From positions 4,399,092 through 4,463,091 of the forward strand of contig BDGG01000003.1 of the NCBI GenBank assembly GCA_001949185.1: DNA of 64,000 bases. Direction: 5' to 3'. Of the stretch, positions 6,626-61,400 are shown piece by piece (within the stretch, counting starts at the first letter, position 1; every line of letters begins with the position of its first letter). The notes under the pieces are model-generated. The model was not told the DNA's origin and did no database searches. It worked only from the letters and a program-made list of their open reading frames with translations. The position numbers and the translations under genes are program-made. This DNA is from Ramazzottius varieornatus (Eukaryota; Animalia; Tardigrada).

Positions 6626-8963
6626 GATATAAATCGGTTGATGCGTAGGCCGAGAGAAAACTTTTGTGGACAAAGCTTCGTGGATCGTTGGTTTGACGAT
6701 TTATAAGAATTTTATAACTTTGCTATGTGGTGGTGTGAAGAAGGTTTGACTTTCACTAACGTACCCGCGCAGTGCATTTGGGAAATCGGCAGATGGAATG
6801 AACAAAAACGTTGGCCCGAAGTGGCGCACTTTTTCATTGGTTTTGGCTAGAAGTTTGCCCCACTTCTGATATCCATCTTGTACGTTTCTTTGCCGGGCGC
6901 CCATTTTTATCCCGGAGTTAGTCACATGTCCAATAATATTATGGGGAAGGAAAGTATCTTTTCATAAAATTCCAACTGCGTTATATTTTCTGTCATGGGA
7001 CATAGTCAGTGATCTGGTCCATCAGATTGCAACCGAGCAAGGGGCTGCGCGAACTCATCAAGGTCTTGGGCGTTAGTCCCGTGCTCATCTTGCGAGCCAT
7101 CCACATTGATGGACAGGAAAGAGTCGTTGCTGAAGACCCATGATAAAGGAGCGTTCTCCCGATCAGCATGACTGTGCTGAAATGGTTGTACGTGCTCACT
7201 AACGTCAGAATCCATAGACTCTGCAGAATATATAACTCTGCTAACGTGCTCTAACAAGTACTTATTGAAAAATATTCTCTTGTCGTCTGGGAAAATCTGC
7301 CAGTCCAGGTACCGGCGCAGTGCATTGCACCATGGCAAGTGCATCTGATGCACAACCTCACGCACATGAATACAAATCTGAATGGCGTGCTGTGCTATGT
7401 ACAAAGGCCGAGCGCATTCCATCACGCACCTACAAAAACTGCACAGTGTGCAGTACCGAACAGAGGTTCTTGGATGATTTTGGCCTGTCCTTGGACACTA
7501 CAAACCGTGTATCTTGTCTCCACCAAATATTCAACACGCTGTGACACTTGTCTCAGCGCGGCAGCGAACGAGCAGCGAAGCAGCCAGCTGTTCTGACGCA
7601 CTCTGCGCCCATCCCAGAACCATCTGATATAGACAATGAGAGTCGTAACGAGCTTGAAATTGGGACAATAAAATTTTCACCCGCTTTTGCAGGAAGATGT
7701 CCCATCTCTCTTCAAGCAATTCCAGCTTCCCAGCGCCGCGCATCCTCCCATTGTCCCGCTGCCTTTCCGTTGAGTATAGGTCTGCCACACAGGGGGAAAG
7801 AAACTGCGGTCATGCTGCGTCTCCGAGCGGCCCGACGTCCCTCAAACGAGGTATCTTGGTGAGAATATCATGCTCGGTGAGAATATCATGCCATCCTCAC
7901 TTCCGGTTGTTTTCAGAAGGACTACCATTGTTCTTCATTGTCGTCTCTGATAGTTATCAACAGCCAAGACCAGGGGAGAAATACCTACCCTATTTCCTGG
8001 CCGAAATCCGACTCCTGCTCACTGTGGAGAAGAGCTTTACATCTGCATTTCGTTTCGCTGCTCCGGCTCTGTACGTTAATTGATTCGCTTCTTGCGTGCA
8101 GATGTCGTCGTTGTCCCTTTCTATTAAGCATTCGTTCTTTACAGGACTGAGGTACGTCTGGAAGACGAAGAAACCGTTAAATGGTCGGACATCGTGACGC
8201 CCAACAACACTTTGTTGATCTGCTCTCCCCAAGGTAAACACGATGGAATCTCGCATGGTGCCTTAGACCGTCAGTTTTCTCGCTTTCTTTCGCTTATCTA
8301 ATCGTGCGACAAGTCCTCCCGATCTTTCGTAGAATGGAGCCGATATTACATAAGGAACCAGAACGAAAGTAGCCTTGGATGCATCACCGTCGACGACACA
8401 GTCCGTGACGCAGTCACCCTTCGACCATTGGTCACCAGCGAGGTATGTGACGCATATGTAGCAGGTTTTCTTCTGAAGTCTTTCATAAGTTGTACGACAA
8501 CCGCTTCCGGTTATTCGTGTTTCGATCATCTTCTTCGCAGGTTTTGTCCCATCAGTCGTTCGTACTCAAACACTTCGTCCTTCCGAATGGCTGTCCCATC
8601 AACCCTGCAGACGAAGCCAAGTTCTCCCTCTACGATCTCAGTAGCCCTTCTCGAAGCATCACGATCAGCACATTCAAGAAGTCACCTCTAAGCTTTCACC
8701 CGAGCTCCGATCCGGGCGCTGCTACCCTTGAAGGTGATATGAACATTCTTCACGAAAGTGGCCACTCAACGCCATTCATTCTCAAGCAACCGCCATCGGG
8801 CTTGGCTCATCGCAGACAGATGCTTAACGACCAGTAAGCTTGATTCCCCCATCGAGCTCCCCTATTTGGTCGAATTAACAGTTTATTTCGTAGTTCGCCC
8901 AGTAAGAAGGGACAGATTTCCAGCGGTGTCGATAAGCGTCTGTCGTTCAACACGAGCAAGAAC

Positions 8964-11900
8964 ATGCCAAGACTGCAGTCCCCAATGACGATGAGTACTC
9001 CGGGTAAGAAGTTTCTCATTAGCTATGTCCAAAAAGAAGGAAAAGAGAGGGCGATACTGCTGAAGAACGAGCTGGAGCGCCATGGCTGCACCGTCTTCCT
9101 CGACTTCGAAAATATTGTATGCGGCATGGACTGGCAAGATGTCCTGAACAAGGCCGTCAAGGACTGCGAAGTGTTCGTCCCACTTGTCACCGACTCATAC
9201 GGTACGTCTTTCATTCCATGAGTAACATGGATGCTCGACAAACAAGCTCGACCAGATTGCTTTTTCCAAGTGGCGCACCGGTTCAGTGTGATTGTTTGGA
9301 AACGTGCGCCACTTGGAAAACACCGAGCTGGTCGAGTTTGTTAGCCGAGCTCTCTATCGACTGTAAAGGATGCTGCTATCATTATTTTCATACTTTAGGT
9401 GAAACATTATGGACTAACCGGGAAGTCAAGCTGGCGGATGTCATGAAGAAGATCGTCGTTCCGGTCAGCCTGATCGAACATTGGCCGCCATCTTGTTTGG
9501 CCATACAGTTTGCTACAAGTATGTGAGGAGTTGGTCGGTTTTATTCAGGAAAGTCATCCAGCCTTTGGTTTCTAGCACAGCATGTCCAGTGGAGCAGAAA
9601 TTCCTCGCCGTGGAAAGGTGGGGCGCACATTTTGCAGTTTTGTCCCAACCGGAGGTGATTTGAAAGTGCATGCCTCAAGTGAAACTTTTTGTTTCATTAG
9701 ATGACAGGCGTAGTGGGTCAGTCTTCTCGCCGGAGGAGGAGAAGGAATGTGTCAAGTTCGTCGCAAGAGCCATTCTGGACCTCTACCAGCAACTGAAGAC
9801 TCACTACAGTGCCCTGTCGGCACCTGCAACGGACACGGAAACCCCGCCATTCAACTTCCTTTCAGCTTCAGTGCCCCGGAGAATGGCCAGAGTTAGACTT
9901 TATTTTCTCTTTCTTGCGGAAACCTATATATTACAGTGTTCGTAATGGCGAGTGTGATGCATTACAGACATCGTCTTTGAAAAGTTATCCTTACGATTCG
10001 GGAAGAAACCTGGCGGTCGAAGAGGCCAAGAAACCACGAGAAGGCAAGCCGCTGATCGTGGTTTGCGCTCACCCATCCCAAAGATCTTTTGTACGTTGTC
10101 CTGTACCCTGTTATTTGTAGCATGGAATCTAGGGGAACGCACTTGACAAGATCAGTTTTCCCAAAGTGGCGCACAACTCCAGCTGACCACACTGGACAAG
10201 TGCGCCACTGGAGAAAAATCTTTCTGTGTTGTTCAAGTTGAATTTTCACACCGTCAAACAGAGCGCTCATTGGTAATCTACATCGTATCTTTTACTCTCA
10301 GATTGACCAGATTCGAGAAGAGATGGGCAGTGGCGACGGCAAGTACGACATCTGGTCCACCACAGATGCGCCTTCGCTGTGGTCGGACACTGCGCGAGAG
10401 AAGATGGTGACGCCGCAGTTCGACAACCAGAACCAGAACCCGCAGTTCCAGCGAGTCTCCCTCATGAGCAGTAGCAGTGGTGGAACTGCTTCTAGTGGCT
10501 CCCCAAGCGAAAGTATTAACGGATGCCTCTTTCAAGAGAAAGCAGATGAAGCCGGCATGGTGGTCCTCGTCCTCTCGGCGGCATTCGCCAGCAGCAGTAT
10601 CTGCAAACACTTCGTAGGTTTATTACTTGTCTAGCTTTCCTTCGAAGCGTGTTCTCTGATCGTTCGTCTCTGTGCAGTTATTTTACGTGGAGCGCCGAAA
10701 GCGAATCATCCCAGTCGTTTTCGAGAAGTTCAGCATGCCTGGTTGGATGACGACACTCATCGGAAACAAGGAAGTCGAGGTACGTACCCGAAAAGAGAAG
10801 GTCGGCAAACAAACTCGACCAGATGGTTTTCGCAAGTTGCGCACGTCTTGGTTTTATTGGCTGAAAGTTTGCGCCACTTGCAAAAACGATCTGCCGTATC
10901 ACACTTTCGAATATATATTCCGTGACTTCGAGCGGTTTTGTTTAGGATTGTCATGCGAAGAATTTCATCGATAGACTTCGTACAAAGCTGAACCGGGCAG
11001 TGAATCTGGATATGCACGCCGAGTGTGCTGAAGAGGACTTGTCAGAATCCAATATTCTAAAAGGGGTAACTTCTTCCGTTCTGTTCTGATCTGTTGAAAC
11101 GTGTTACCTGTTTGTAGTCTTTTGCTTGTTTCAGTTGAAGTTTCTTCATACCAACGGCATTCCTCCAGAGCGTTCAGTCTACATCTCCGGAAGTGGCTCT
11201 CATGGCTTGGAATCAGCATTTTTGAGCAGGTACACCATTACTTTTCTTTCTCCTTTAGCCGACTGTTGGTAATGCACAAGATGGTATTTTCAGGGAGATT
11301 GCGAACGAGCTGTCGAAGCTACCGAAGCTTTGCGTAGCGACCGGCGGTCTTCTTGGTGTAGGGCAGGCACTCAGTACGCAGTTTCTCGAAGCACGTAAGC
11401 ACAACCTCACTACGACTGGCCGGACGAAGCAGGAGGAATGTGTATACCACGTCCTTCCGTCCTATGAAGAATCGGTATGTGGAAACCGTAGCCTCAGCCA
11501 ATCGTTTTCCTTCCTCTGCTCGATAAAAGTTAGATGGGACGTGGGCAAATGAACTGAACCTGATCATGATATCAAGTGGCGCACATTATCATTGGTTTTG
11601 AATGGAACGGTGCGCCACTTGGGAAAACGATCTGGCTCATTTCATTCGCGTACGTCCCAGATGTGTACTGAAACCAGTTGGGTGACTTGAATTGGGACTT
11701 GTAGGATCAGAAAGAGATCGCTGATCAAAATGGTGATGGTACTTTCAACCCGGCACCAACGGGCAAAACATTCTTCGTGGGGAAAAGTCTTCGGGAACGA
11801 GAAACGGTGGTTGGTCGTTACTTCAAAGTCTGTATCCTCATTGACGGTAAGCTTTTCTCTTCCATATGCTTTACATAATTGATGGAAATTTTTCTGTGGA

Positions 11901-12437
11901 CTGATGCGACTAATTTGTCCAAGCAGGTGATACACACGCTGCTCATGAAGCTACCGAGGCCATCTGGGCGGACAACGTGGTTTTACCCATCCTCAAAAGT
12001 GGTGGGGCTGCTGGAGGAGACTACGACTTCCGGATGGACAAGGTACGCCAGTGTTGATTGGGGGAATCGTCTTTCCGTATTTTTCTCTTTGTGAAACTTG
12101 ATCGTACTAAATTAAGATTGAGCTGTTTCTACCTGTGGTGCTGGTGTAGGCTCCGGCTGGTGTGAGTGAGGAACATTGGGCTGTCATCCGGTCGAAAGAG
12201 TCTGCAGATAGCGACATCGCGGTTGCCGTCAGAGAGATTGTGGCTGGTCTTTTGCCCAAGACGAAAGACGGAAAGAAGCCCAGAACACCTCGAACTCCCA
12301 AAAGTAAAGCTCAAGTACCGCTTACGCCTTCATCGTCCTACTCGTTACGCGATCGCACTGGCCGAAAGCGCATCTTCGAAGAAGACTCTCCCATCACCGA
12401 AGAGGGCTCTTCCACTCTTTCCAACTCAAAGTTTTGA
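8964..12437 (+). CDS. TIR-TIR-SLOG multidomain protein (about 12 exons)
   Basis: Exons ~8964-9201, 9399-9518, 9576-9617, 9701-~9891, ~9940-10090, 10302-10613, 10678-10779, 10946-11065, 11135-11229, 11294-11474, 11705-11846, 11927-12042, 12150-12437. TIR1: FLISY..VFLD..DWQD..YGETLWTNREVKLAD. TIR2: EAGMVVLVLSAAFASSSICKHFLFYVERRKRIIPV. SLOG: VYISGSG / VATGGLLGVG / ILIDGDTHAAHE / VLPILKSGGAA. Confidence 0.8.
9233..9350. repeat. Palindromic element family A (type copy), intron of TIR-SLOG gene
   Basis: GCTCGACAAACAAGCTCGACCAG..AAGTGGCGCAC-N25-GTGCGCCACTT..CTGGTCGAGTTTGTTAGCCGAGC. Confidence 0.9.
10135..10245. repeat. Family A palindrome, intron of TIR-SLOG gene
   Basis: Core inverted pair, 25-nt spacer 10175-10199. 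Confidence 0.8.
11543..11650. repeat. Family A palindrome, intron of TIR-SLOG gene
   Basis: Core inverted pair, 25-nt spacer 11585-11609. Confidence 0.85.
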
Positions 12438-12950
12438 ATCTCACGTCAATATATCGTAATACTTTTTCTTGTTCAGTTAACTTTGTCCATAATTCCATAA
12501 CGTATTAATTTTTCGTTCGTTTTTTGTTGAGTTGAGTTTTACAGCGATTCAACTTAATATTCGATCACTTTCCGATTCTTCGCAGAAGTTCCTAGCGCTA
12601 GCTTTCCTGATGTTTTTATTGTGGTTTGCAGCTTGAAGAAAGATCGTTTACATTTTCTGAACGTAGCTCTAAATTTTTGACGAAGTTGTTAGTAACATAT
12701 TTGTTCGGCCCTTTTTTGGCCATCCATCAAACAGAAAAATAAATGTTGAAAAACGTGTGAGGCACTTGAAAACAACCCTTCGCCTTTTCGGATAAATACA
12801 AACGTAATTCCATCTAACGGAAAAATTCACAAACGAAAAGACAGTATAGTCAAACCAGAACAATATCGAATCGACAGAGCCGAAACTGGAAATTTTGCCG
12901 GAAAAGATCAACCACACAAAGAAAGGCCAAATTTAATTTGAAAGAGTGTC

Positions 12951-15146
12951 TTATGGAGCACAAGGAATAGGTCTAAGAAGGAAGATTTCTCGATCGCCAG
13001 AAAGGAGTGGTTCTCGCGAGGACAAGTGTACGTCAATGAGATGAGGAACCGACAGGAACTCTTGGTTCTTGGTACGAACTATCCCGTCATAGTCAACCAG
13101 AAGAATGTGTGTGCGAGTACCGAGATGAAAGCCACTGAGGACGTACTGTTGATGTGGAGCTGCTGGACCGTCAACTGTAGCTGAAGCACTAGCTCGCACG
13201 AGGAAGTCGCCGTCGTTTCTCAGTAAAGCTTCGGCTTCTTTGCGAGACATCTTGCCGTGGAACCAAGAGAAGGACTCGAGGTCCGGGTAGATGAAATGAT
13301 CCATGTTCCTCACATCGAATGGATCTGCAGAAAACATCCACCAGTCAAGAAACGCTACTTCAAAACGAGATGTGTCGGTGAAAATACAAAAGCTCGGCGA
13401 ACTAACTCGACAAGTTCTCTTTCCCAAGTGGCGCATGTTTGCCGTCTTGTTGGCTGGTGCCATGCGCCACTTGGAACAATCAACAAGGCGGTCTCCCGTT
13501 GTGGCGCACTTTTTCCGTGCTATCGGCTGGGAGCGTGCGCCACTTGGAGAAGCAAGCTTGTCGCATTTGTTTGGCTAGGTCCCACACCAAGTGGGGTTTG
13601 CTTATGAATTGACAGCAAGGTACCTCGGTTCTCCGCAAGTCGGTGAGAGGGCTGGGAACGTTTCGAAGGCTCCTTCTGAGTTTCCAGGAACTCGAGAAAG
13701 TCCTCGTTCTTCTTCGGTTTGTCATAGGCGGGCGAGTTCAAGTCGATCAGGTTGGCATCAGGACGGGACGAGCCACCCGGAAGAGTGTTCGTCGAGTTGG
13801 AGAGCTGCAACGCCTTCACTTCGGTACGGGTCTTTGAATTATCATTTGCCGGCTTGGAGTTTTCCTCGGCGTTCATTTCTGAAAGCACACACCACACTCT
13901 TGAATACTTTGATCCAAATAGAGACGAAACCCCACCAGATTGTCTGCCCAAGTGGCGCACGCTTCTAGCCAATAAAACTACGAACGTGCGCCACTTGGAG
14001 AACGATCTAGAGTTTGTTAGCGAGTTTCCAATCGATTTTGACGAGTCTTACCTGCGTCTGGTGCAACTTTACCCGGCATATCGTTGTAGTACTCGGCGTC
14101 AGCTGGCGGAAGTTTGGCCGGAGGTTTGCGTTTCTCCGCGGCAGGTGAGGATGTTGGCACGATGTCCGGAAGTTTGCCTGCTGTGCTGGTGGACAGTCGG
14201 ACCTCCGAGTTGGGTCGTGCGTGTTGATGGGGCTGGTCTCCACTGGTCTTCAGGTGCTCTTTGAAGCGCAGGTCAAACGCTTGACCGATGGTGGCCACGC
14301 AGTCTGCTGTGGCCGCCGTGCCACATTCGATCACGTAACACCAACGCGAAGAGCCACTTGCCTCGCCACCACCGCCGCTTTGCTCGTTGTTTTTGCCCAC
14401 GTAGGCCATAAAATCCATCGTTTCAGCGTCACCACCAGATGCAAAACTGATCTCTGGTATCTCGTGAGAGGCAATCATCTCGCCGTCGAGCGTGATAATC
14501 TGCATTACGAAAAACACATGGCTTGAAATTATCGTAAGTTTCATAACACATCAAAAAGAAATGAACCACGATTACACCTGCACACCGGAACCCCAGTGCC
14601 GCACACGCACCTAGCGTATGCCGGTGGTTGAAAGACAACAAACCCAACTAACCCACTTCAACCCGCGCGCGGCTACACCAACCACGTGCCGTGCTTCGTG
14701 ACGACGAATCAACAATTAAAATTCCATGCGTTTGATGCAAAAAATGAAAAACGAAAGAAATTTCCGTAAAAAATTCTAAAGATTTTTCCTACCTTCAAAC
14801 TGTCAACGCTGACGAAGAGATCGACGTCCGAGTTGGCATTGGTCAAGTCCACAGTACCCAGAACCTGCTGGATGCGCTTGTCCGTCTTGCGTTTCCTGGA
14901 AGAAGCTGTGATGCCTGTTGCCTCGCATACTCGCGCAATGCATTCCTTGGCCACCAGTGCGCGATCGCTGAATTCCAGAGTTCGCATGGATATGACAATC
15001 GACACTCTGCCCACGTAGCGAACACGGAAAGACTTGCCTTTACGTAACTGCTCCTCACTGGTGTTCCATTCTCGTTCCATCGTCTTGTTGCTGAAGCCGC
15101 CGTCGCTGTCCCGACTCAGATCACCAGCTGTTCCACGTAGAGGCAT
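12951..15146 (-). CDS. Shc: SHC-transforming adaptor protein (PTB + SH2)
   Basis: PTB: VRYVGRVSIVISMRTLEF and ASHEIPEISFASGGDAETMDFMAYVGK; EYYNDMPGK Grb2-type site; SH2: WFHGKMSRKEAEALLRNDGDFLVRAS. About 4 coding exons; start codon tentative. Confidence 0.92.
13392..13580. repeat. Family A palindrome, dimeric form, Shc intron
   Basis: Two tandem core inverted pairs inside one pair of outer arms. Confidence 0.85.
13922..14025. repeat. Family A palindrome, Shc intron
   Basis: Perfect core pair, 25-nt spacer 13961-13985. Confidence 0.85.
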
Positions 15147-57797: not shown

Positions 57798-58407
57798 TGG
57801 ATACGTTTATGAAGTTTCATCTCGTGGAAATAGTCAGAAATTTCACGGAAATACATCTTTAGGCTGGTTATCTCGTTTCATTGGTCCGCTCTGCACAATA
57901 TCCCTGAATAAACTTGGAACGCTGGGGAATTTGTTCTGAATGGAATGTTCAAGCAGATGCATTCTCGACACCAGAATGAGCAACTGAGAGAAACTCCTTC
58001 CGGCCAAACGAATTGATGCATCCCAGGGGAAAACTAAGCATCACGCTGTAAGAAAATAAAACTAACAGATGAAAAGAGACACGCCACGTAATTTACCATG
58101 ACAGTTTGTCCAACGAAAGGCACGTCGCAGACCTGTTCGAAGGAAGTTGAAGGATGTTGAAGGAAGTCAACCATCCAATACGTTTACTCGGAAAAAAGCA
58201 ACCTTGTGACCATGTGAAACTCAAAGCTGATCCCCCATAGTGTCTGCACTAATTGCGGAAGGAAGGACCCAGGAAAGAAACAAAGTTAACTAAATGGAAG
58301 ACGGGTTGTCATATTATTCTCACACCGGCAAGTGAATCCATCAATCAACAAGAAGCTCAATCAAGCGAGCAAAAAACAACAGGCTGCTGGCTCGACTGAA
58401 CTAAGAC

Positions 58408-61400
58408 CTAAATATCGTCATTGCTGATCTCCATGTACACGTCGTACTCCTCCCTATTACAGTGTCCCGAGTCGGAAAAGGAGTGTTTGTAGTACTTTCC
58501 GTCAACGCACACAGCTGAGGAGAAGTGATCGTTAGTGGGTGGAGTTGTTTTGTTCTTCGGTTACGTTGTCTAATCGTCACTTTATGAACTTACCGATGAC
58601 CGACTGAGCATTCTGCTGGGAAGTAAATGCACTGATGCAGGGGACTTCCGCAGGAACTGTGAAGCTGGCGAGGCCCCATTGTGAGTCCGCGTACTGGCTG
58701 AACATTCCGAGCTTCGGTATCCTACACAGGAGAAGACTATGATGGGCAATCCCACAACTTCTGATTCTTGCATGACTGAGCTTATTTCGAAGACATCAAT
58801 ATTCTCTTGAAACAGCCCGTACCAGCCAAGCTGTCCCTCCCGATTTTTCGTAAATCTTTCTAAATTTTAGATCTACTGTATTCCCTCGATGAGTCTGCGC
58901 AATCACGTGGCGCGCCCGTAGAAATACGTCACGTGATTGCGCAGACTCATCGAGGGAATAGTGTACTTTNNNNNNNNNNNNNNNNNNNNNNNNNNNNNNN
59001 NNNNNNNNNNNNNNNNNNNNNNNNNNNNNNNNNNNNNNNNNNNNNNNNNNNNNNNNNNNNNNNNNNNNNNNNNNNNNNNNNNNNNNNNNNNNNNNNNNNN
59101 NNNNNNNNNNNNNNNNNNNNNNNNNNNNNNNNNNNNNNNNNNNNNNNNNNNNNNNNNNNNNNNNNNNNNNNNNNNNNNNNNNNNNNNNNNNNNNNNNNNN
59201 NNNNNNNNNNNNNNNNNNNNNNNNNNNNNNNNNNNNNNNNNNNNNNNNNNNNNNNNNNNNNNNNNNNNNNNNNNNNNNNNNNNNNNNNNNNNNNNNNNNN
59301 NNNNNNNNNNNNNNNNNNNNNNNNNNNNNNNNNNNNNNNNNNNNNNNNNNNNNNNNNNNNNNNNNNNNNNNNNNNNNNNNNNNNNNNNNNNNNNNNNNNN
59401 NNNNNNNNNNNNNNAATAGTGTACTTTTTGCCTTGCCCCACCCCAACCCGTTCTTAACATTTCAACTTGTGCTCTGTATTCGCGTGTATTCGCGTGGTAG
59501 ACTGCTTTGGAAACTCATCTTGAAACTAGGTCGTTTTGACACGTCCACTCACTCTGCTTGTGGCCGTTCTGCGCAATAAAATTCCGACTTCTCCAGAACG
59601 AAATTTTTTACACGCAGTTTCAAAGACATTTACTGTGTTTTGTAGTGTTTCAGAAGAAAATTTTTGGTTGGAAAGTCAAAACGACGCGAGATGCGAAATG
59701 AAAATAAAAAACACTGAAATGTCACCCCGATCGACTGGTGCGCCTCTTTTGCGTCGAGCAAAAAAACAGATGTGGAACTTCTCCACCTGTCAACTGCCCC
59801 ACGATTTTCTTCCAGGCTTTATTGTTCTCAAACGGTTCCAGAGGGCTGTAGTAATGATAAAAACATTTAAAACAAGCGCAAAAATCATCTGGTTGGCAGA
59901 AGCGAATTTACGATTGAGCAGGGACAACTCGACTGGAACGCGCTGTAATTACTGTAAGAGACTGACCGATGAGCTCGACAAGATAATTTCCCAAGCGGCG
60001 CACGTTTTCAGTACTATTGGCTGGAAGAACGCGTCACTTGGAGAACTTTATCTGTGATTAACAGCAAGCGTGCGCCACTCGGAGAAACAAATTTAAAGCG
60101 TTCTTATGCCAAGCTTTCAATTATCAAATTTTTTTTACCAATTTTTGCTCCATTAAATGTTGAGAGACGACTAGTGAAGAAGTCTATCTTACTTGCTCCG
60201 CTTGTTGAGGACCGTATCTTTTACAGCAAAAATGTGGACGGTTCCCTTGTCGCTGGAGACGCAGAGGTACTCAGAGTCCAGACTAAAGTTGATGGAGTAG
60301 AGTCTGGCCGTGTCCATGCCTCTCCGTAGTTCCACCAGCAGGGTGCGCTTGAGCGTGTCGAACACTCGAATGAGCGTTCCCTAGAGGACAGATTGCATAA
60401 GCCCCTTTACTATCTGGCCGATCTGCATGCTTGAGCATGGCGCCATCTGCTCGTGGAGCTAGCGGTTCGCTGCAGACCAACCTTGGTCGAAGCTGTCGCA
60501 CAGATGTTGCCATTCTGGCTGACAGCAATACAGGCAAGATCGGTTTGATGAGCTTTGATGGGAGCTTGAGTGGCGTCGGGTGAGGAAAAGTTCTAGAAGA
60601 GCATCAGAGAAAGACGAGCCGAAGATTCGTGAATTCGAGTAATGCATACCTTTATCTGCAGTGTCCCACATTTCACACCCGGAAACGCCATGATCTGCCT
60701 ATCGCTGGTCGTGTTGAGTTCACACAAACCTGTAACACCACACCTTGATCAGATTACTCATTGCATAACCTGAAGTTCAACACGTGCTGGTGAAATTGAA
60801 ACTGTAACTTGCCTCGAGGGTTATCACGGGTTTCGCATGTGTAAATCTTTGAGGCACCGTTCGGGAAGCGAAAGACATGAATTTGGTTCCGTAAGATACA
60901 CACAATTCTGAAACGACAAGAAAGTGAAAGCATAGTAAGCAAGAACAGTCAATAAAGGTTTCCGCACTTGTCTCGACGAAGTCGAGCAGAGATCACAGGC
61001 AAGCCGAACGTCAGCTCCATGACAAACTTCTTGGCGGCATCGTCCCATATCAACACTGCAAGAACAACATTCGGTCGGGGACAGGGTAAAGTCAACATTT
61101 ACTCCTCCAAGACCATTAAGACTACAATTCAGTCTTTTTGACGTGATTGGTATGATCGTGCACTTCATCGATCGCAATCTGGGGACTCGGCAAACGAAAT
61201 CGACAACATTGTTTCCCCAAGTGGCGCACTTCTCCGAAGCTACTGGCTCAAAGCGTGCGCCACATAAAAAACGATCGGATCGAGTTTCCACATGGCGTAC
61301 AGTGTCTGTGTCATTAGCTGGAAGCGTGCGCCACTTGGAAATACGATCGTGTTAGTTTGTTTGCCGAGATACTGACTTCCAGTCAGGACAAAGATTCAGG

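What the first reader, a model, noticed from the sequence alone, without database searches (positions are those of the whole stretch)
8964..12437. Animal TIR-TIR-SLOG gene: Thoeris-like nucleotide-signalling modules fused in one spliced protein
Seen: splicing the short exons at 11135-12042, which the ORF track misses, gives SVYISGSG..LSREIANELSKLPKLCVATGGLLGVGQAL..LRERETVVGRYFKVCILIDGDTHAAHEATEAIWADNVVLPILKSGGAAGG. In order, this shows the SLOG (SMF/DprA-LOG) Rossmannoid hallmarks: strand + SGS, TG/SG..LGVG, R..hh, G..E, and hhPh..[TS]G.A. Two TIR domains lie upstream. Known: in bacterial Thoeris, ThsB TIR makes an NAD-derived signal that is bound by the SLOG domain of ThsA; TIR-associated SLOG families (STALD, TPALS) exist; SARM1 and plant TIRs are NADases. 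Inference: a soluble protein with no signal peptide or TM segment that could both generate and sense an NAD-derived messenger, i.e. a candidate uncharacterised innate-immune or stress signalling system in an invertebrate. The canonical introns and animal neighbours argue against contamination. Homologues may already exist as uncharacterised proteins.
Basis: partly seen in the sequence, partly recalled or inferred. Interest (0 to 1): 0.92.

Follow-up and report, generated by a model that had tools for sequence, protein, structure and literature searches.

The report
Tardigrade TIR-TIR-SLOG signalling gene
This is a real, expressed water-bear gene (RvY_08017) that joins an NAD-cleaving TIR enzyme domain, a dead second TIR and a nucleotide-binding SLOG domain. 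It belongs to an old, widespread but barely studied animal family, and a 2026 preprint has already catalogued this protein and assayed a starfish relative.

Summary
It is RvY_08017 of Ramazzottius varieornatus: 18 coding exons, window 7697-12437, 979 aa. Transcript contigs from four studies confirm every junction I could see, including a 42-nt microexon, and link the TIR and SLOG exons in one contig.

The architecture is two N-terminal repeats of about 90 aa, then TIR1, TIR2, SLOG and a disordered tail.
- **TIR1:** Pfam TIR_2 at 70 bits. Glu378 is invariant in 68/68 relatives and aligns to SARM1 E642.
- **TIR2:** a divergent TIR with Phe632 (Gln in most relatives) at the catalytic position.
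- **SLOG:** aa 716-920 fold as SLOG, with Z 17.4 to TM1055 and 17.0 to the ThsA SLOG domain. Orthologues, but not the tardigrade protein itself, pass Pfam LDcluster4.

Relatives occur in a sponge, molluscs, nemerteans, an annelid, mites, echinoderms and hemichordates.

Novelty is limited. bioRxiv 10.64898/2026.04.20.719644 lists this very protein with Glu378 and SLOG 718-915, and shows that TIR1 of a Patiria orthologue makes cADPR. The roles of SLOG, TIR2 and the N-terminal repeats remain untested. My best reading is a SLOG-gated TIR NAD+ cyclase/hydrolase. This scan had not noted the gene before.

The parts
7697..12437 (+). Whole CDS of RvY_08017 (979 aa, 18 coding exons). Exons: 7697-7849, 7916-8071, 8146-8233, 8333-8442, 8541-8833, 8894-9201, 9399-9518, 9576-9617, 9701-9891, 9968-10090, 10302-10613, 10678-10779, 10946-11065, 11135-11229, 11294-11474, 11705-11846, 11927-12042, 12150-12437 (stop).
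   Evidence: P0002 matches the window exactly, exon by exon. All junctions from 8231 onward are seen as GT..AG joints in transcript contigs of four runs. The three most 5' exons rest on the database model plus partial contig depth.
7748..8226 (+). N-terminal repeat 1 (aa ~18-130), of unknown family; possibly beta-grasp/ubiquitin-like.
   Evidence: hhalign of repeat 1 against repeat 2 gives Prob 99.1%, E 6.6e-19. The AF2 model shows a beta-rich fold with pLDDT 80-95. Atlas feature hits to beta-grasp families score 0.76-0.82, which is a lead only. There is no Pfam hit.
8227..8687 (+). N-terminal repeat 2 (aa 131-218), with the family motif F.FLD.NGWPI..QE..L.V...V.I.
   Evidence: family consensus.
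8688..8993 (+). Disordered linker (aa 219-300).
   Evidence: pLDDT is below 50 over residues 219-300.
9003..9816 (+). TIR1 (aa 304-462), spread over four exons including the 42-nt microexon 9576-9617.
   Evidence: Pfam TIR_2 at 70.4 bits, E 2.6e-19, and E 3e-10 for exon 8964-9200 alone. VIA-align gives Z 16.5 to the SARM1 TIR (27% identity) and Z 17.0 to the SPARTA TIR. PADLOC ThsB model hits at E 1.9e-8.
9422..9424 (+). Codon of Glu378, the predicted catalytic glutamate of TIR1, in the motif YGETLWTNREVKLAD.
   Evidence: It aligns to the Glu of SARM1's 'WVHKEIV', which is E642 by the numbering in preprint Table S4. It is invariant in 68/68 family members. Preprint Table S2 lists it as 'GLU 378'.
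10034..11005 (+). TIR2 (aa ~510-686), a divergent TIR with a disordered insert (aa 562-600). It is predicted to be non-catalytic.
   Evidence: Pfam TIR_2 reports two stretches. The family profile hits the TLR15/TLR2 TIR at E 1.9e-4 and MyD88 TIR at E ~0.1. hhalign of TIR2 against TIR1 gives E 2.5e-4 in register. The model shows the beta-alpha order of a TIR.
10611..10613 (+). Codon of Phe632, the TIR2 residue at the position of the catalytic Glu.
   Evidence: hhalign pairs F632 with E378. That column holds Q in 54, E in 6 and F in 3 of 68 sequences.
11162..12257 (+). SLOG domain (aa 716-920) across five exons. Motifs: YISGSGS, ATGGLLGVG, SLRERE and LIDGDTHAAHE (family consensus L.EGGPGAAFE).
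   Evidence: VIA-align over model residues 717-920: Z 17.4 to TM1055 (1rcu_A, rmsd 2.2, 154 aligned); Z 17.0 to BcThsA SLOG (8bto_A residues 281-476); Z 16.6 to ThsA SLOG bound to 3'cADPR (7uxs_B). Foldseek E-values are 1.6e-5 to 1.7e-4. Atlas hits are all SLOG families. Orthologues pass Pfam LDcluster4.
12270..12434 (+). Disordered, basic, Pro/Ser-rich C-terminal tail (aa 925-979).
   Evidence: pLDDT is below 50 over residues 925-979.

Best explanation
The locus is the expressed single-copy tardigrade gene RvY_08017. It encodes a soluble 979-aa protein: two N-terminal repeats, a catalytic TIR (TIR1), a degenerate TIR (TIR2), a SLOG domain and a disordered tail. It belongs to an ancient animal family. 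What is shown: the gene model, its transcription as one spliced unit, the three domain folds, and the invariance of the TIR1 catalytic glutamate. What is shown in an orthologue by others: TIR1 alone converts NAD+ to canonical cADPR. What I infer: the protein is a ligand-gated NAD+ cyclase/hydrolase. The SLOG domain would bind a nucleotide or ADP-ribose-derived ligand and control the self-association that TIR enzymes need for activity. TIR2 would act as a non-catalytic TIR partner or scaffold, and the N-terminal repeats would mediate assembly or partner binding. In this reading it works like the sensor-TIR effectors TIR-STING and TIR-SAVED, and like SARM1 with its allosteric sensor domain. The output would be cADPR and/or a local fall in NAD+.
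For: Gene and transcript: P0002 matches 18 exons exactly. In X1 and X5, every joint listed from 8231 to 12148 carries the depth of the single 5.0-5.1 kb contig that the pieces table places from 8331 to 13000, and X9 and X10 show the same joints. The SLOG exon has no paralogue in the 55.8-Mb genome. TIR1: TIR_2 at 70 bits, Z 16-17 to solved TIR NADases, Glu378 aligned to the SARM1 catalytic Glu and invariant in 68/68, and ThsB, TIR-SAVED and Ago-TIR defence models hit. Orthologue activity: Patiria miniata A0A914B4U3 (857 aa) carries the same YGETQWTNRELKLAD motif and is scored 'Active, cADPR yes'. TIR2 is inactive: F632/Q at the Glu position. SLOG: Z 17 to TM1055 and ThsA SLOG, LDcluster4 at 41.3 bits in P0006, and strongly conserved pocket-type motifs (TGG..G 94-99%, R830 96%). 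Precedent for sensor-plus-TIR: SLOG families named for their fusion to TIR, SIR2 or PNP effectors (STALD, TPALS/Cap17-like_N) are the top Atlas feature hits, and bacterial TIR+LDcluster4 fusions exist. That ThsA SLOG binds 3'cADPR is known from PDB 7uxs and 8bto.
Against: No ligand, binding assay or activity exists for this protein, or for any SLOG domain of the family. The tardigrade SLOG fails every Pfam SLOG model by itself, and it has replaced the family's GGPG loop with GD[TS]H, so ligand binding may be altered or lost in tardigrades. The family keeps a LOG-like Arg plus GGxG[AT]xxE signature, which fits an enzyme as well as a sensor. In the preprint, the cluster that holds the tardigrade protein is marked as not tested. 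The Patiria TIR needed 4 h of induction, and no NAD+ depletion was recorded. The TIR1-TIR2 docking test gave no verdict.
Confidence: 0.5

Rival explanations
1. This is the reader's model, a self-contained Thoeris-like loop. TIR1 makes an NAD-derived messenger, and the fused SLOG senses that same messenger in cis or in neighbouring molecules. The result is cooperative, switch-like assembly or feedback control.
For: TIR1 of an orthologue makes cADPR. The SLOG domain superposes on ThsA SLOG bound to 3'cADPR (7uxs_B, Z 16.6). TIR1 hits ThsB models. As established knowledge, the SLOG domain (MHR1/2) of animal TRPM2 binds ADPR.
Against: There is no separate effector domain that the sensed signal could switch on (Pfam finds only TIR). 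In Thoeris the maker and the sensor are separate proteins, so that infection sensing gates production. STALD, ThsA's own family, scores only below threshold in orthologues (16-21 bits against a cut-off of 24), and no ThsA model hits in PADLOC. The orthologue's product is canonical cADPR, not the 3'cADPR that ThsA reads.
Confidence: 0.2
2. The SLOG domain is a LOG-like enzyme, not a sensor. It would cleave an N-glycosidic bond in a nucleotide or in the TIR product (for example, releasing adenine from ADPR, cADPR or AMP). The protein would then be a two-step NAD-processing enzyme.
For: The best structural match is TM1055, and LOG type II and PpnN nucleosidases follow closely (Z 15-17). PF18306 also rings over cut-off in 13 of 14 control genomes, which suggests, though I did not check which proteins match, that it is a broad model close to housekeeping LOG-like proteins. 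The family consensus keeps LOG-like motifs: an Arg in 'SVRQRE' (R830, 96%) and 'GGPGAAFE' matching GGxGTxxE (E853, 82%). The Aravind group has proposed that SLOG domains act both as sensors and as N-glycosidases on ADPR derivatives (PMC9503650).
Against: ThsA's sensor SLOG also uses an Arg and a Glu for ligand binding (my recollection of the 7uxs work, not tested here), so these motifs do not discriminate. The tardigrade clade has mutated the phosphate-binding GGPG loop to GD[TS]H, which is hard to square with conserved catalysis. No assay exists.
Confidence: 0.2
3. The protein is a purely adaptor-type TIR protein. Both TIRs act only as protein-protein scaffolds, as in MyD88 or TLR signalling, and the SLOG-like fold is a structural relic.
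For: TIR2 matches TLR and MyD88 TIRs weakly and lacks the catalytic Glu.
Against: The TIR1 Glu and its surrounding 15-residue motif are invariant from sponge to sea urchin. The orthologue is catalytically active in a Glu-dependent way. The SLOG pocket motifs are 90-99% conserved.
Confidence: 0.05
4. The gene is an artefact: bacterial contamination, recent horizontal transfer, or a pseudogene.
For: The TIR and SLOG domains are typical of bacterial defence islands.
Against: The gene has 17 GT..AG introns, four of which carry the host genome's own palindromic repeat. Spliced transcripts appear in four studies. The 979-codon frame is intact. Orthologues exist in three tardigrades and in at least seven other animal phyla. 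An animal SH2 gene lies next door.
Confidence: 0.01

Closest known systems
Animal TIR-(TIR)-SLOG family as catalogued in bioRxiv 10.64898/2026.04.20.719644 (for example Patiria miniata A0A914B4U3, Macrostomum lignano A0A267GNU3, and R. varieornatus A0A1D1V4B3 itself)
   Same: It is the same family, and for A0A1D1V4B3 the same protein. Table S2 gives TIR 305-446, Glu378 and SLOG 718-915. The Patiria TIR1 shares the invariant YGET.WTNRE.KLAD motif and makes cADPR.
   Different: The preprint tests only isolated TIR1 domains in E. coli. It marks the cluster holding the tardigrade protein as untested and does not discuss the TIR-SLOG fusion in its text. The SLOG domain, TIR2 and the N-terminal repeats have no assigned role there.
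Bacterial TIR + SLOG cluster 4 (PF18306) fusion proteins
   Same: They combine a TIR with a LOG-like SLOG in one polypeptide. An Atlas cluster of 81 mainly cyanobacterial proteins of about 392 aa carries TIR, TIR_2 and LDcluster4, and matches residues 687-890 of the Hypsibius orthologue P0001 at TM 0.67.
   Different: The bacterial proteins have one TIR, no N-terminal repeats and no disordered tail. Their function is also untested as far as I could find. I did not build a tree to test common descent of the fusion.
Type I Thoeris (ThsB TIR + ThsA SIR2-SLOG)
   Same: A TIR with a catalytic Glu is paired with a SLOG fold. TIR1 hits ThsB models, and the SLOG domain superposes on BcThsA SLOG at Z 17.0.
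   Different: Thoeris has two proteins and a SIR2 effector, neither of which is the case here. The SLOG belongs to a different family (STALD versus LDcluster4). The Thoeris messenger is 3'cADPR, whereas the orthologue's TIR1 makes canonical cADPR.
SARM1 / TIR-1
   Same: It is the closest solved TIR by sequence (E 1e-7, 27% identity) with the catalytic Glu aligned. As established knowledge, it is an animal NAD+ hydrolase/cyclase that makes ADPR and cADPR and is controlled by a fused allosteric nucleotide sensor and an oligomerisation module.
   Different: SARM1 uses ARM (sensor) and SAM (octamer) domains N-terminal to a single TIR. This protein has no ARM or SAM, has a second dead TIR, and has a C-terminal SLOG.
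LOG / TIGR00725 proteins (TM1055, PDB 1rcu) and the PpnN nucleosidase
   Same: They give the best structural match to aa 718-918 (Z 17.4, rmsd 2.2, 21% identity). The family shares a Gly-rich loop, an Arg and a GGxG..E motif.
   Different: These are stand-alone metabolic enzymes or proteins of unknown role with no TIR. The tardigrade protein has the GGxG loop mutated to GD[TS]H.
TRPM2 MHR1/2 (LSDAT SLOG)
   Same: It is an animal SLOG domain and, as established knowledge, it binds ADP-ribose. LSDAT clusters appear among the Atlas structure hits at TM 0.64-0.67.
   Different: It belongs to a different SLOG family, is fused to an ion channel rather than to TIR, and shows no sequence-level match here.

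Membership tests
TIR domain (Pfam TIR_2, PF13676) - TIR1 | Profile match above the curated cut-off | tested here: met
   70.4 bits against a cut-off of 28, covering aa 307-423. The exon 8964-9200 alone gives 41.1 bits.
TIR domain - TIR1 | Flavodoxin-like TIR fold that superposes on solved TIRs | tested here: met
   Model residues 304-456 give Z 16.5 to SARM1 (rmsd 2.3, 127 aligned) and Z 17.0 to SPARTA TIR. pLDDT is mostly 80-97.
Catalytic (NADase/cyclase) TIRs | Glutamate at the position of SARM1 E642 | tested here: met
   E378 aligns to the Glu of 'WVHKEIV' and is invariant in 68/68. The preprint makes the same call independently.
Catalytic (NADase/cyclase) TIRs | Glu-dependent NAD+ turnover | not testable with these tools
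   This is reported only for the Patiria orthologue's TIR1 (cADPR, 4 h induction). The text states that activity depended on the Glu in all cases.
TIR domain - TIR2 | Recognisable TIR profile or fold | tested here: met
   The evidence is weak but concordant. There is a second TIR_2 stretch. The family profile hits the TLR15/2 TIR at E 1.9e-4. hhalign to TIR1 gives E 2.5e-4, Prob 43%, in register. The model has a TIR-like beta-alpha order. The preprint annotates a second TIR in the Macrostomum orthologue.
Catalytic TIRs - TIR2 | Catalytic glutamate | tested here: not met
   F632 pairs with E378. The column holds Q 54, E 6 and F 3 of 68. The Macrostomum TIR2 has His there.
SLOG superfamily (SMF/DprA-LOG) | Rossmannoid SLOG fold that superposes on solved members | tested here: met
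   Z 17.4 to TM1055, 17.0 to BcThsA SLOG, 16.6 to PpnN, 16.1 to the Moco carrier protein and 15.1 to LOG type II, all over model residues ~697-928. Foldseek E-values are 1.6e-5 to 2e-4. All ten Atlas structure rows carry SLOG-superfamily Pfam families (LDcluster4, Cap17-like_N, LSDAT, DprA, LOG), with TM 0.58-0.87.
SLOG cluster 4 (Pfam LDcluster4, PF18306) | Profile match above the curated cut-off (26.3 bits) | tested here: not met
   The three tardigrade proteins give no hit even at E<=10, and the window is not hit in the six-frame search. Orthologues do pass or come close: P0006 41.3, P0058 27.1, P0013 26.3, and others 17-25 bits. Membership of the tardigrade protein is therefore by orthology and fold, not by its own score.
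SLOG superfamily | Conserved Gly-rich nucleotide-binding loops after beta-1 and beta-2, and the loop plus acidic residue after beta-4 | tested here: inconclusive
   YISG(S/G) is present (G725 96%) and TGG..G.G is present (T754 99%, G755 94%, G756 97%, G759 96%). The third motif, GGPGAAFE in the family, is GDTHAAHE in tardigrades, with E853 kept. I assigned these residues to the ligand pocket by motif order, not from coordinates.
SLOG sensors | Binding of a nucleotide or ADPR-derived ligand | not testable with these tools
   No assay exists for any member of this animal family (searches found none).
Thoeris defence system | ThsA-type effector (SIR2, TM or Macro) coupled to a STALD SLOG, with a separate ThsB | tested here: not met
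   No SIR2, Macro or TM domain is present. STALD scores only 16-21 bits (cut-off 24) in orthologues and nothing in tardigrades. PADLOC hits ThsB models but no ThsA model. The TIR and SLOG are in one chain.
SARM1 family | ARM-SAM-SAM-TIR architecture | tested here: not met
   Only the TIR matches. There is no ARM or SAM.

The most novel reading that the evidence does not exclude
Animals from sponges to sea urchins and tardigrades may keep a compact, Thoeris-related second-messenger module. In it, TIR1-made cADPR (or a related ADPR isomer) would be read by the fused SLOG domain of the same or neighbouring molecules, driving cooperative assembly through TIR2 and the N-terminal repeats. That would be a previously unrecognised animal nucleotide-signalling pathway in immunity or stress. 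Tardigrades would have retuned the ligand pocket (GGPG changed to GD[TS]H).
Probability: 0.2. Interest if true: 0.8.

Novelty: new member of a known kind. Interest (0 to 1): 0.45.

Why it matters
Catalytic TIR signalling is established in bacteria and plants and is only now being shown in animals. This family is the one place where an animal TIR enzyme is physically fused to a SLOG domain, the fold that reads TIR-made messengers in bacterial Thoeris and ADPR in TRPM2. Its spread from a sponge to echinoderms points to an old and conserved function. If SLOG gates TIR1, or reads its product, that would give a directly testable animal counterpart of bacterial sensor-TIR immunity. It would also provide a second regulated cADPR source besides CD38-type cyclases and SARM1. 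For this window the practical gains are these:
- a corrected, RNA-supported gene model;
- the finding that TIR2 is catalytically dead;
- the N-terminal tandem repeat;
- a tardigrade-specific change in the SLOG loop.

The architecture itself is not new, because a 2026 preprint already lists it.

Tried and rejected
**Pfam on single exons.** Only the first TIR1 exon hits. The SLOG exons are too short.

**phmmer of the 60-aa SLOG exon against 1.84 billion representatives.** This gave one hit, the Hypsibius orthologue. It served to obtain a full-length reference but said nothing about remote kin.

**phmmer of the Hypsibius SLOG region.** Only the three tardigrade proteins came back. The profile of all three was needed to reach other phyla.

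**AF2 with the 3-sequence alignment.** The model was unusable at pLDDT 40 and was replaced by the 68-sequence run at pLDDT 74.5.

**Profile against PDB sequences.** No SLOG chain was reached by sequence, only TIRs.

**PF18306 against the own genome in six frames.** It misses this gene and finds two weak, unrelated hits.

**Complex prediction of TIR1 (303-465) with TIR2 (508-690).** No verdict (score 0.14 against a mark of 0.34). This is no evidence either way.

**Burroughs et al. 2015 (NAR), which defined the SLOG families.** It is not held in the library, so what I say of it is from memory.

**Contamination or HGT artefact.** Rejected on introns, transcripts and animal orthologues.

**Joined exons.** I searched exons singly by reference. 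After that I used the database protein P0002, which a tool returned and which matches the exons exactly.

Full report
**1. What is in the sequence**

The region is eukaryotic, with GC of about 0.47 and short GT..AG introns. I worked out exon borders by hand and then laid transcriptome contigs from four independent studies on window 8000-13000. Every junction I had drawn was confirmed as a GT..AG joint in all four runs. One exon I had missed also appeared: a 42-nt microexon at 9576-9617, encoding QHVQWSRNSSPWK. In runs X1 and X5, every joint listed from 8231 to 12148 carries the depth of the one 5.0-5.1 kb contig that the pieces table places from 8331 to 13000. The TIR exons and the SLOG exons are therefore assembled into one contig. 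The contigs run on past 13000 into the convergent neighbour, so the far 3' part is not evidence of a single RNA. The junction chain inside this gene is unbroken.

**2. Identity of the gene**

I searched exon by exon, by reference.
- Pfam on the single exons found only TIR_2 in exon 8964-9200 (E 3e-10). The SLOG exons are too short on their own.
- The 60-aa exon 11295-11474 has no second copy in the 55.8-Mb, 200-contig genome.
- Against 1.84 billion representatives, that exon found a single protein, P0001.
- Further searches named P0001 as Hypsibius exemplaris BV898_15974. They also returned P0002, Ramazzottius varieornatus RvY_08017 (979 aa), and P0003 from Paramacrobiotus metropolitanus.

P0002 matches the window exactly over 18 coding exons from 7697 to 12437.

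**3. Family**

A profile of the three tardigrade proteins found 78 proteins of 640-1140 aa at E values from 0 to 5e-56. They come from the following groups:
- nemerteans (Tubulanus, Lineus);
- hemichordates (Glandiceps, Ptychodera);
- molluscs (a chiton, abalones, whelks, an apple snail, oysters, scallops, clams);
- echinoderms (Strongylocentrotus, Lytechinus, Diadema, Amphiura);
- the sponge Corticium;
- the annelid Owenia;
- mites (Dinothrombium, Oppia).

Nearly all are named 'uncharacterized protein' or 'TIR domain-containing protein'. No vertebrate, insect, nematode or cnidarian appeared in that list. I did not test absence beyond that.

**4. Domains**

AF2 with only three sequences failed (pLDDT 40). 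With 68 family members it gave pLDDT 74.5 and pTM 0.61, with more than 90 in the domain cores.

*N-terminal repeats.* Residues ~18-130 and 131-218 are two homologous repeats (hhalign Prob 99.1%, E 6.6e-19). They have no Pfam match. Atlas leads point to beta-grasp/ubiquitin-like domains at scores of 0.76-0.82, which are leads only.

*TIR1 (304-462).*
- It hits TIR_2 at 70 bits.
- It superposes on SARM1 (Z 16.5, 27% identity) and on SPARTA TIRs (Z 17.0).
- It hits ThsB, TIR-SAVED and Ago-TIR defence models.
- Glu378 aligns to the SARM1 catalytic Glu. It sits in the 15-residue motif YGETLWTNREVKLAD, which is almost invariant in 68 sequences, and E378 itself is 68/68.

*TIR2 (~510-686).* It is divergent.
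- There is a second TIR_2 stretch.
- The family profile reaches the TLR15/2 TIR at E 1.9e-4.
- hhalign to TIR1 gives E 2.5e-4 in register.
- The residue paired with E378 is Phe632. That column is Gln in 54 of 68 and Glu in only 6, so TIR2 is predicted to be non-catalytic.
- It nevertheless has its own invariant patch (Y635, E637, R639, K640).

*SLOG (716-920).*
- VIA-align gives Z 17.4 to TM1055 (rmsd 2.2, 154 of 170 residues), Z 17.0 to the BcThsA SLOG domain (residues 281-476), and Z 16.6 to ThsA SLOG with 3'cADPR. PpnN, the Moco carrier protein and LOG type II follow.
- Foldseek agrees.
- The ESM Atlas lists only SLOG families by features. By structure it lists a mostly molluscan cluster of 244 proteins with TIR_2 and LDcluster4, plus bacterial TIR+LDcluster4 fusions.
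- By sequence, the tardigrade proteins miss every Pfam SLOG model. Orthologues reach LDcluster4 at up to 41.3 bits (cut-off 26.3), with weaker STALD scores.

The domain is therefore SLOG by fold and orthology, and it is closest to the LOG-like cluster 4 rather than to ThsA's STALD family.

*Other features.* The tail (925-979) is disordered. A hydropathy scan finds no credible TM segment or signal peptide.

**5. A tardigrade peculiarity**

The family consensus after beta-4 is L.EGGPGAAFE, a LOG-like GGxG..E loop. All three tardigrades have LIDGD[TS]HAAH[EL] instead. The change is conserved within tardigrades, so it looks like retuning of the pocket rather than decay.

**6. Literature**

The bioRxiv preprint 10.64898/2026.04.20.719644 (April 2026) surveys eukaryotic TIRs.
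- Its Table S2 lists A0A1D1V4B3_1 of R. varieornatus with TIR 305-446, active-site Glu378 and SLOG 718-915. It lists the Hypsibius protein likewise. Both are clustered under a Macrostomum representative whose second TIR has His at the active site.
- Table S3 marks that cluster as not tested.
- Table S4, entry 129, is TIR1 of an 857-aa Patiria miniata protein with the same invariant motif. It is scored active and produces cADPR after 4 h.
- The text says activity depended on the catalytic Glu in all cases.
- SLOG appears only in a figure legend for these animal proteins. The fusion is not discussed.

No other paper in the library mentions the family or these accessions. Burroughs et al. 2015 could not be read.

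**7. Mechanism**

Shown here: the gene model, the joint transcription, the domain folds, the invariance of the TIR1 Glu, and the loss of that Glu in TIR2. Shown by others, for an orthologue: TIR1 makes canonical cADPR.

Inferred: the SLOG domain binds a nucleotide or ADPR-type ligand and controls TIR1. This would parallel the bacterial sensor-TIR effectors and SARM1, with TIR2 as a non-catalytic TIR partner and the N-terminal repeats as assembly or partner modules (confidence 0.5).

Rivals:
- A LOG-like enzymatic SLOG that processes nucleotides or the TIR product (0.2). The LOG-like Arg and GGxG..E motifs, and the TM1055 and PpnN matches, keep this alive.
- A pure adaptor (0.05).
- An artefact (0.01).

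A docking test of TIR1 with TIR2 gave no verdict.

**8. Verdict**

Novelty is modest, because the architecture of this very protein is already tabulated and an orthologue's TIR1 has been assayed. The open and testable question is what the SLOG domain, the dead TIR2 and the N-terminal repeats do.

Noticed in passing
window 9268-9314, 10164-10210, 10834-10879, 11574-11620 (four introns of this gene) and about 55 further sites across the window: A short palindromic element (AAGTGGCGCAC ... GTGCGCCACTT, arms about 36 nt apart) sits in four introns of the gene. The 11-mer occurs 63 times in the window against 1.09 expected. Transcript contigs from other loci end loosely at these sites (tables 5c and 7). 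It looks like a MITE-type repeat. Other first-stage notes on this genome describe the same palindrome.
   Followed up: partly
window 9576-9617: A 42-nt microexon (14 codons, QHVQWSRNSSPWK) lies inside TIR1. It is supported by all four transcriptome runs and is present in the database model.
   Followed up: yes
window 12951-13463 (minus strand): A convergent neighbour has an exon encoding an SH2 domain (Pfam SH2, E 2.7e-12). Its coding end lies about 510 nt from the stop codon of the TIR-SLOG gene, and the assembled RNA contigs run across both genes.
   Followed up: partly
window 7748-8687 (aa 18-218 of P0002): The N-terminal tandem repeat of about 90 aa (motif F.FLD.NGWPI..QE..L.V..I....V.I) is conserved across the whole animal family and has no Pfam model. 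The Atlas structure search gives weak look-alikes (TM ~0.35) in GTPase- and MACPF-containing eukaryotic proteins. It may be an undescribed domain.
   Followed up: partly
window 11840-11960 (aa 845-853): The SLOG loop GGPG is replaced by GD[TS]H in tardigrades only. The change is conserved in Ramazzottius, Hypsibius and Paramacrobiotus.
   Followed up: partly
window 10620-10700 (aa 635-640, TIR2): TIR2 has lost the catalytic Glu, yet it carries an invariant Y635 / E637 / R639 / K640 patch (YYCEQRKR in the family consensus). This suggests a conserved non-catalytic function, such as an interface or a binding site.
   Followed up: no
window 58001-60000: GC falls to 0.35, against about 0.47 elsewhere in the window. 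I did not examine it.
   Followed up: no
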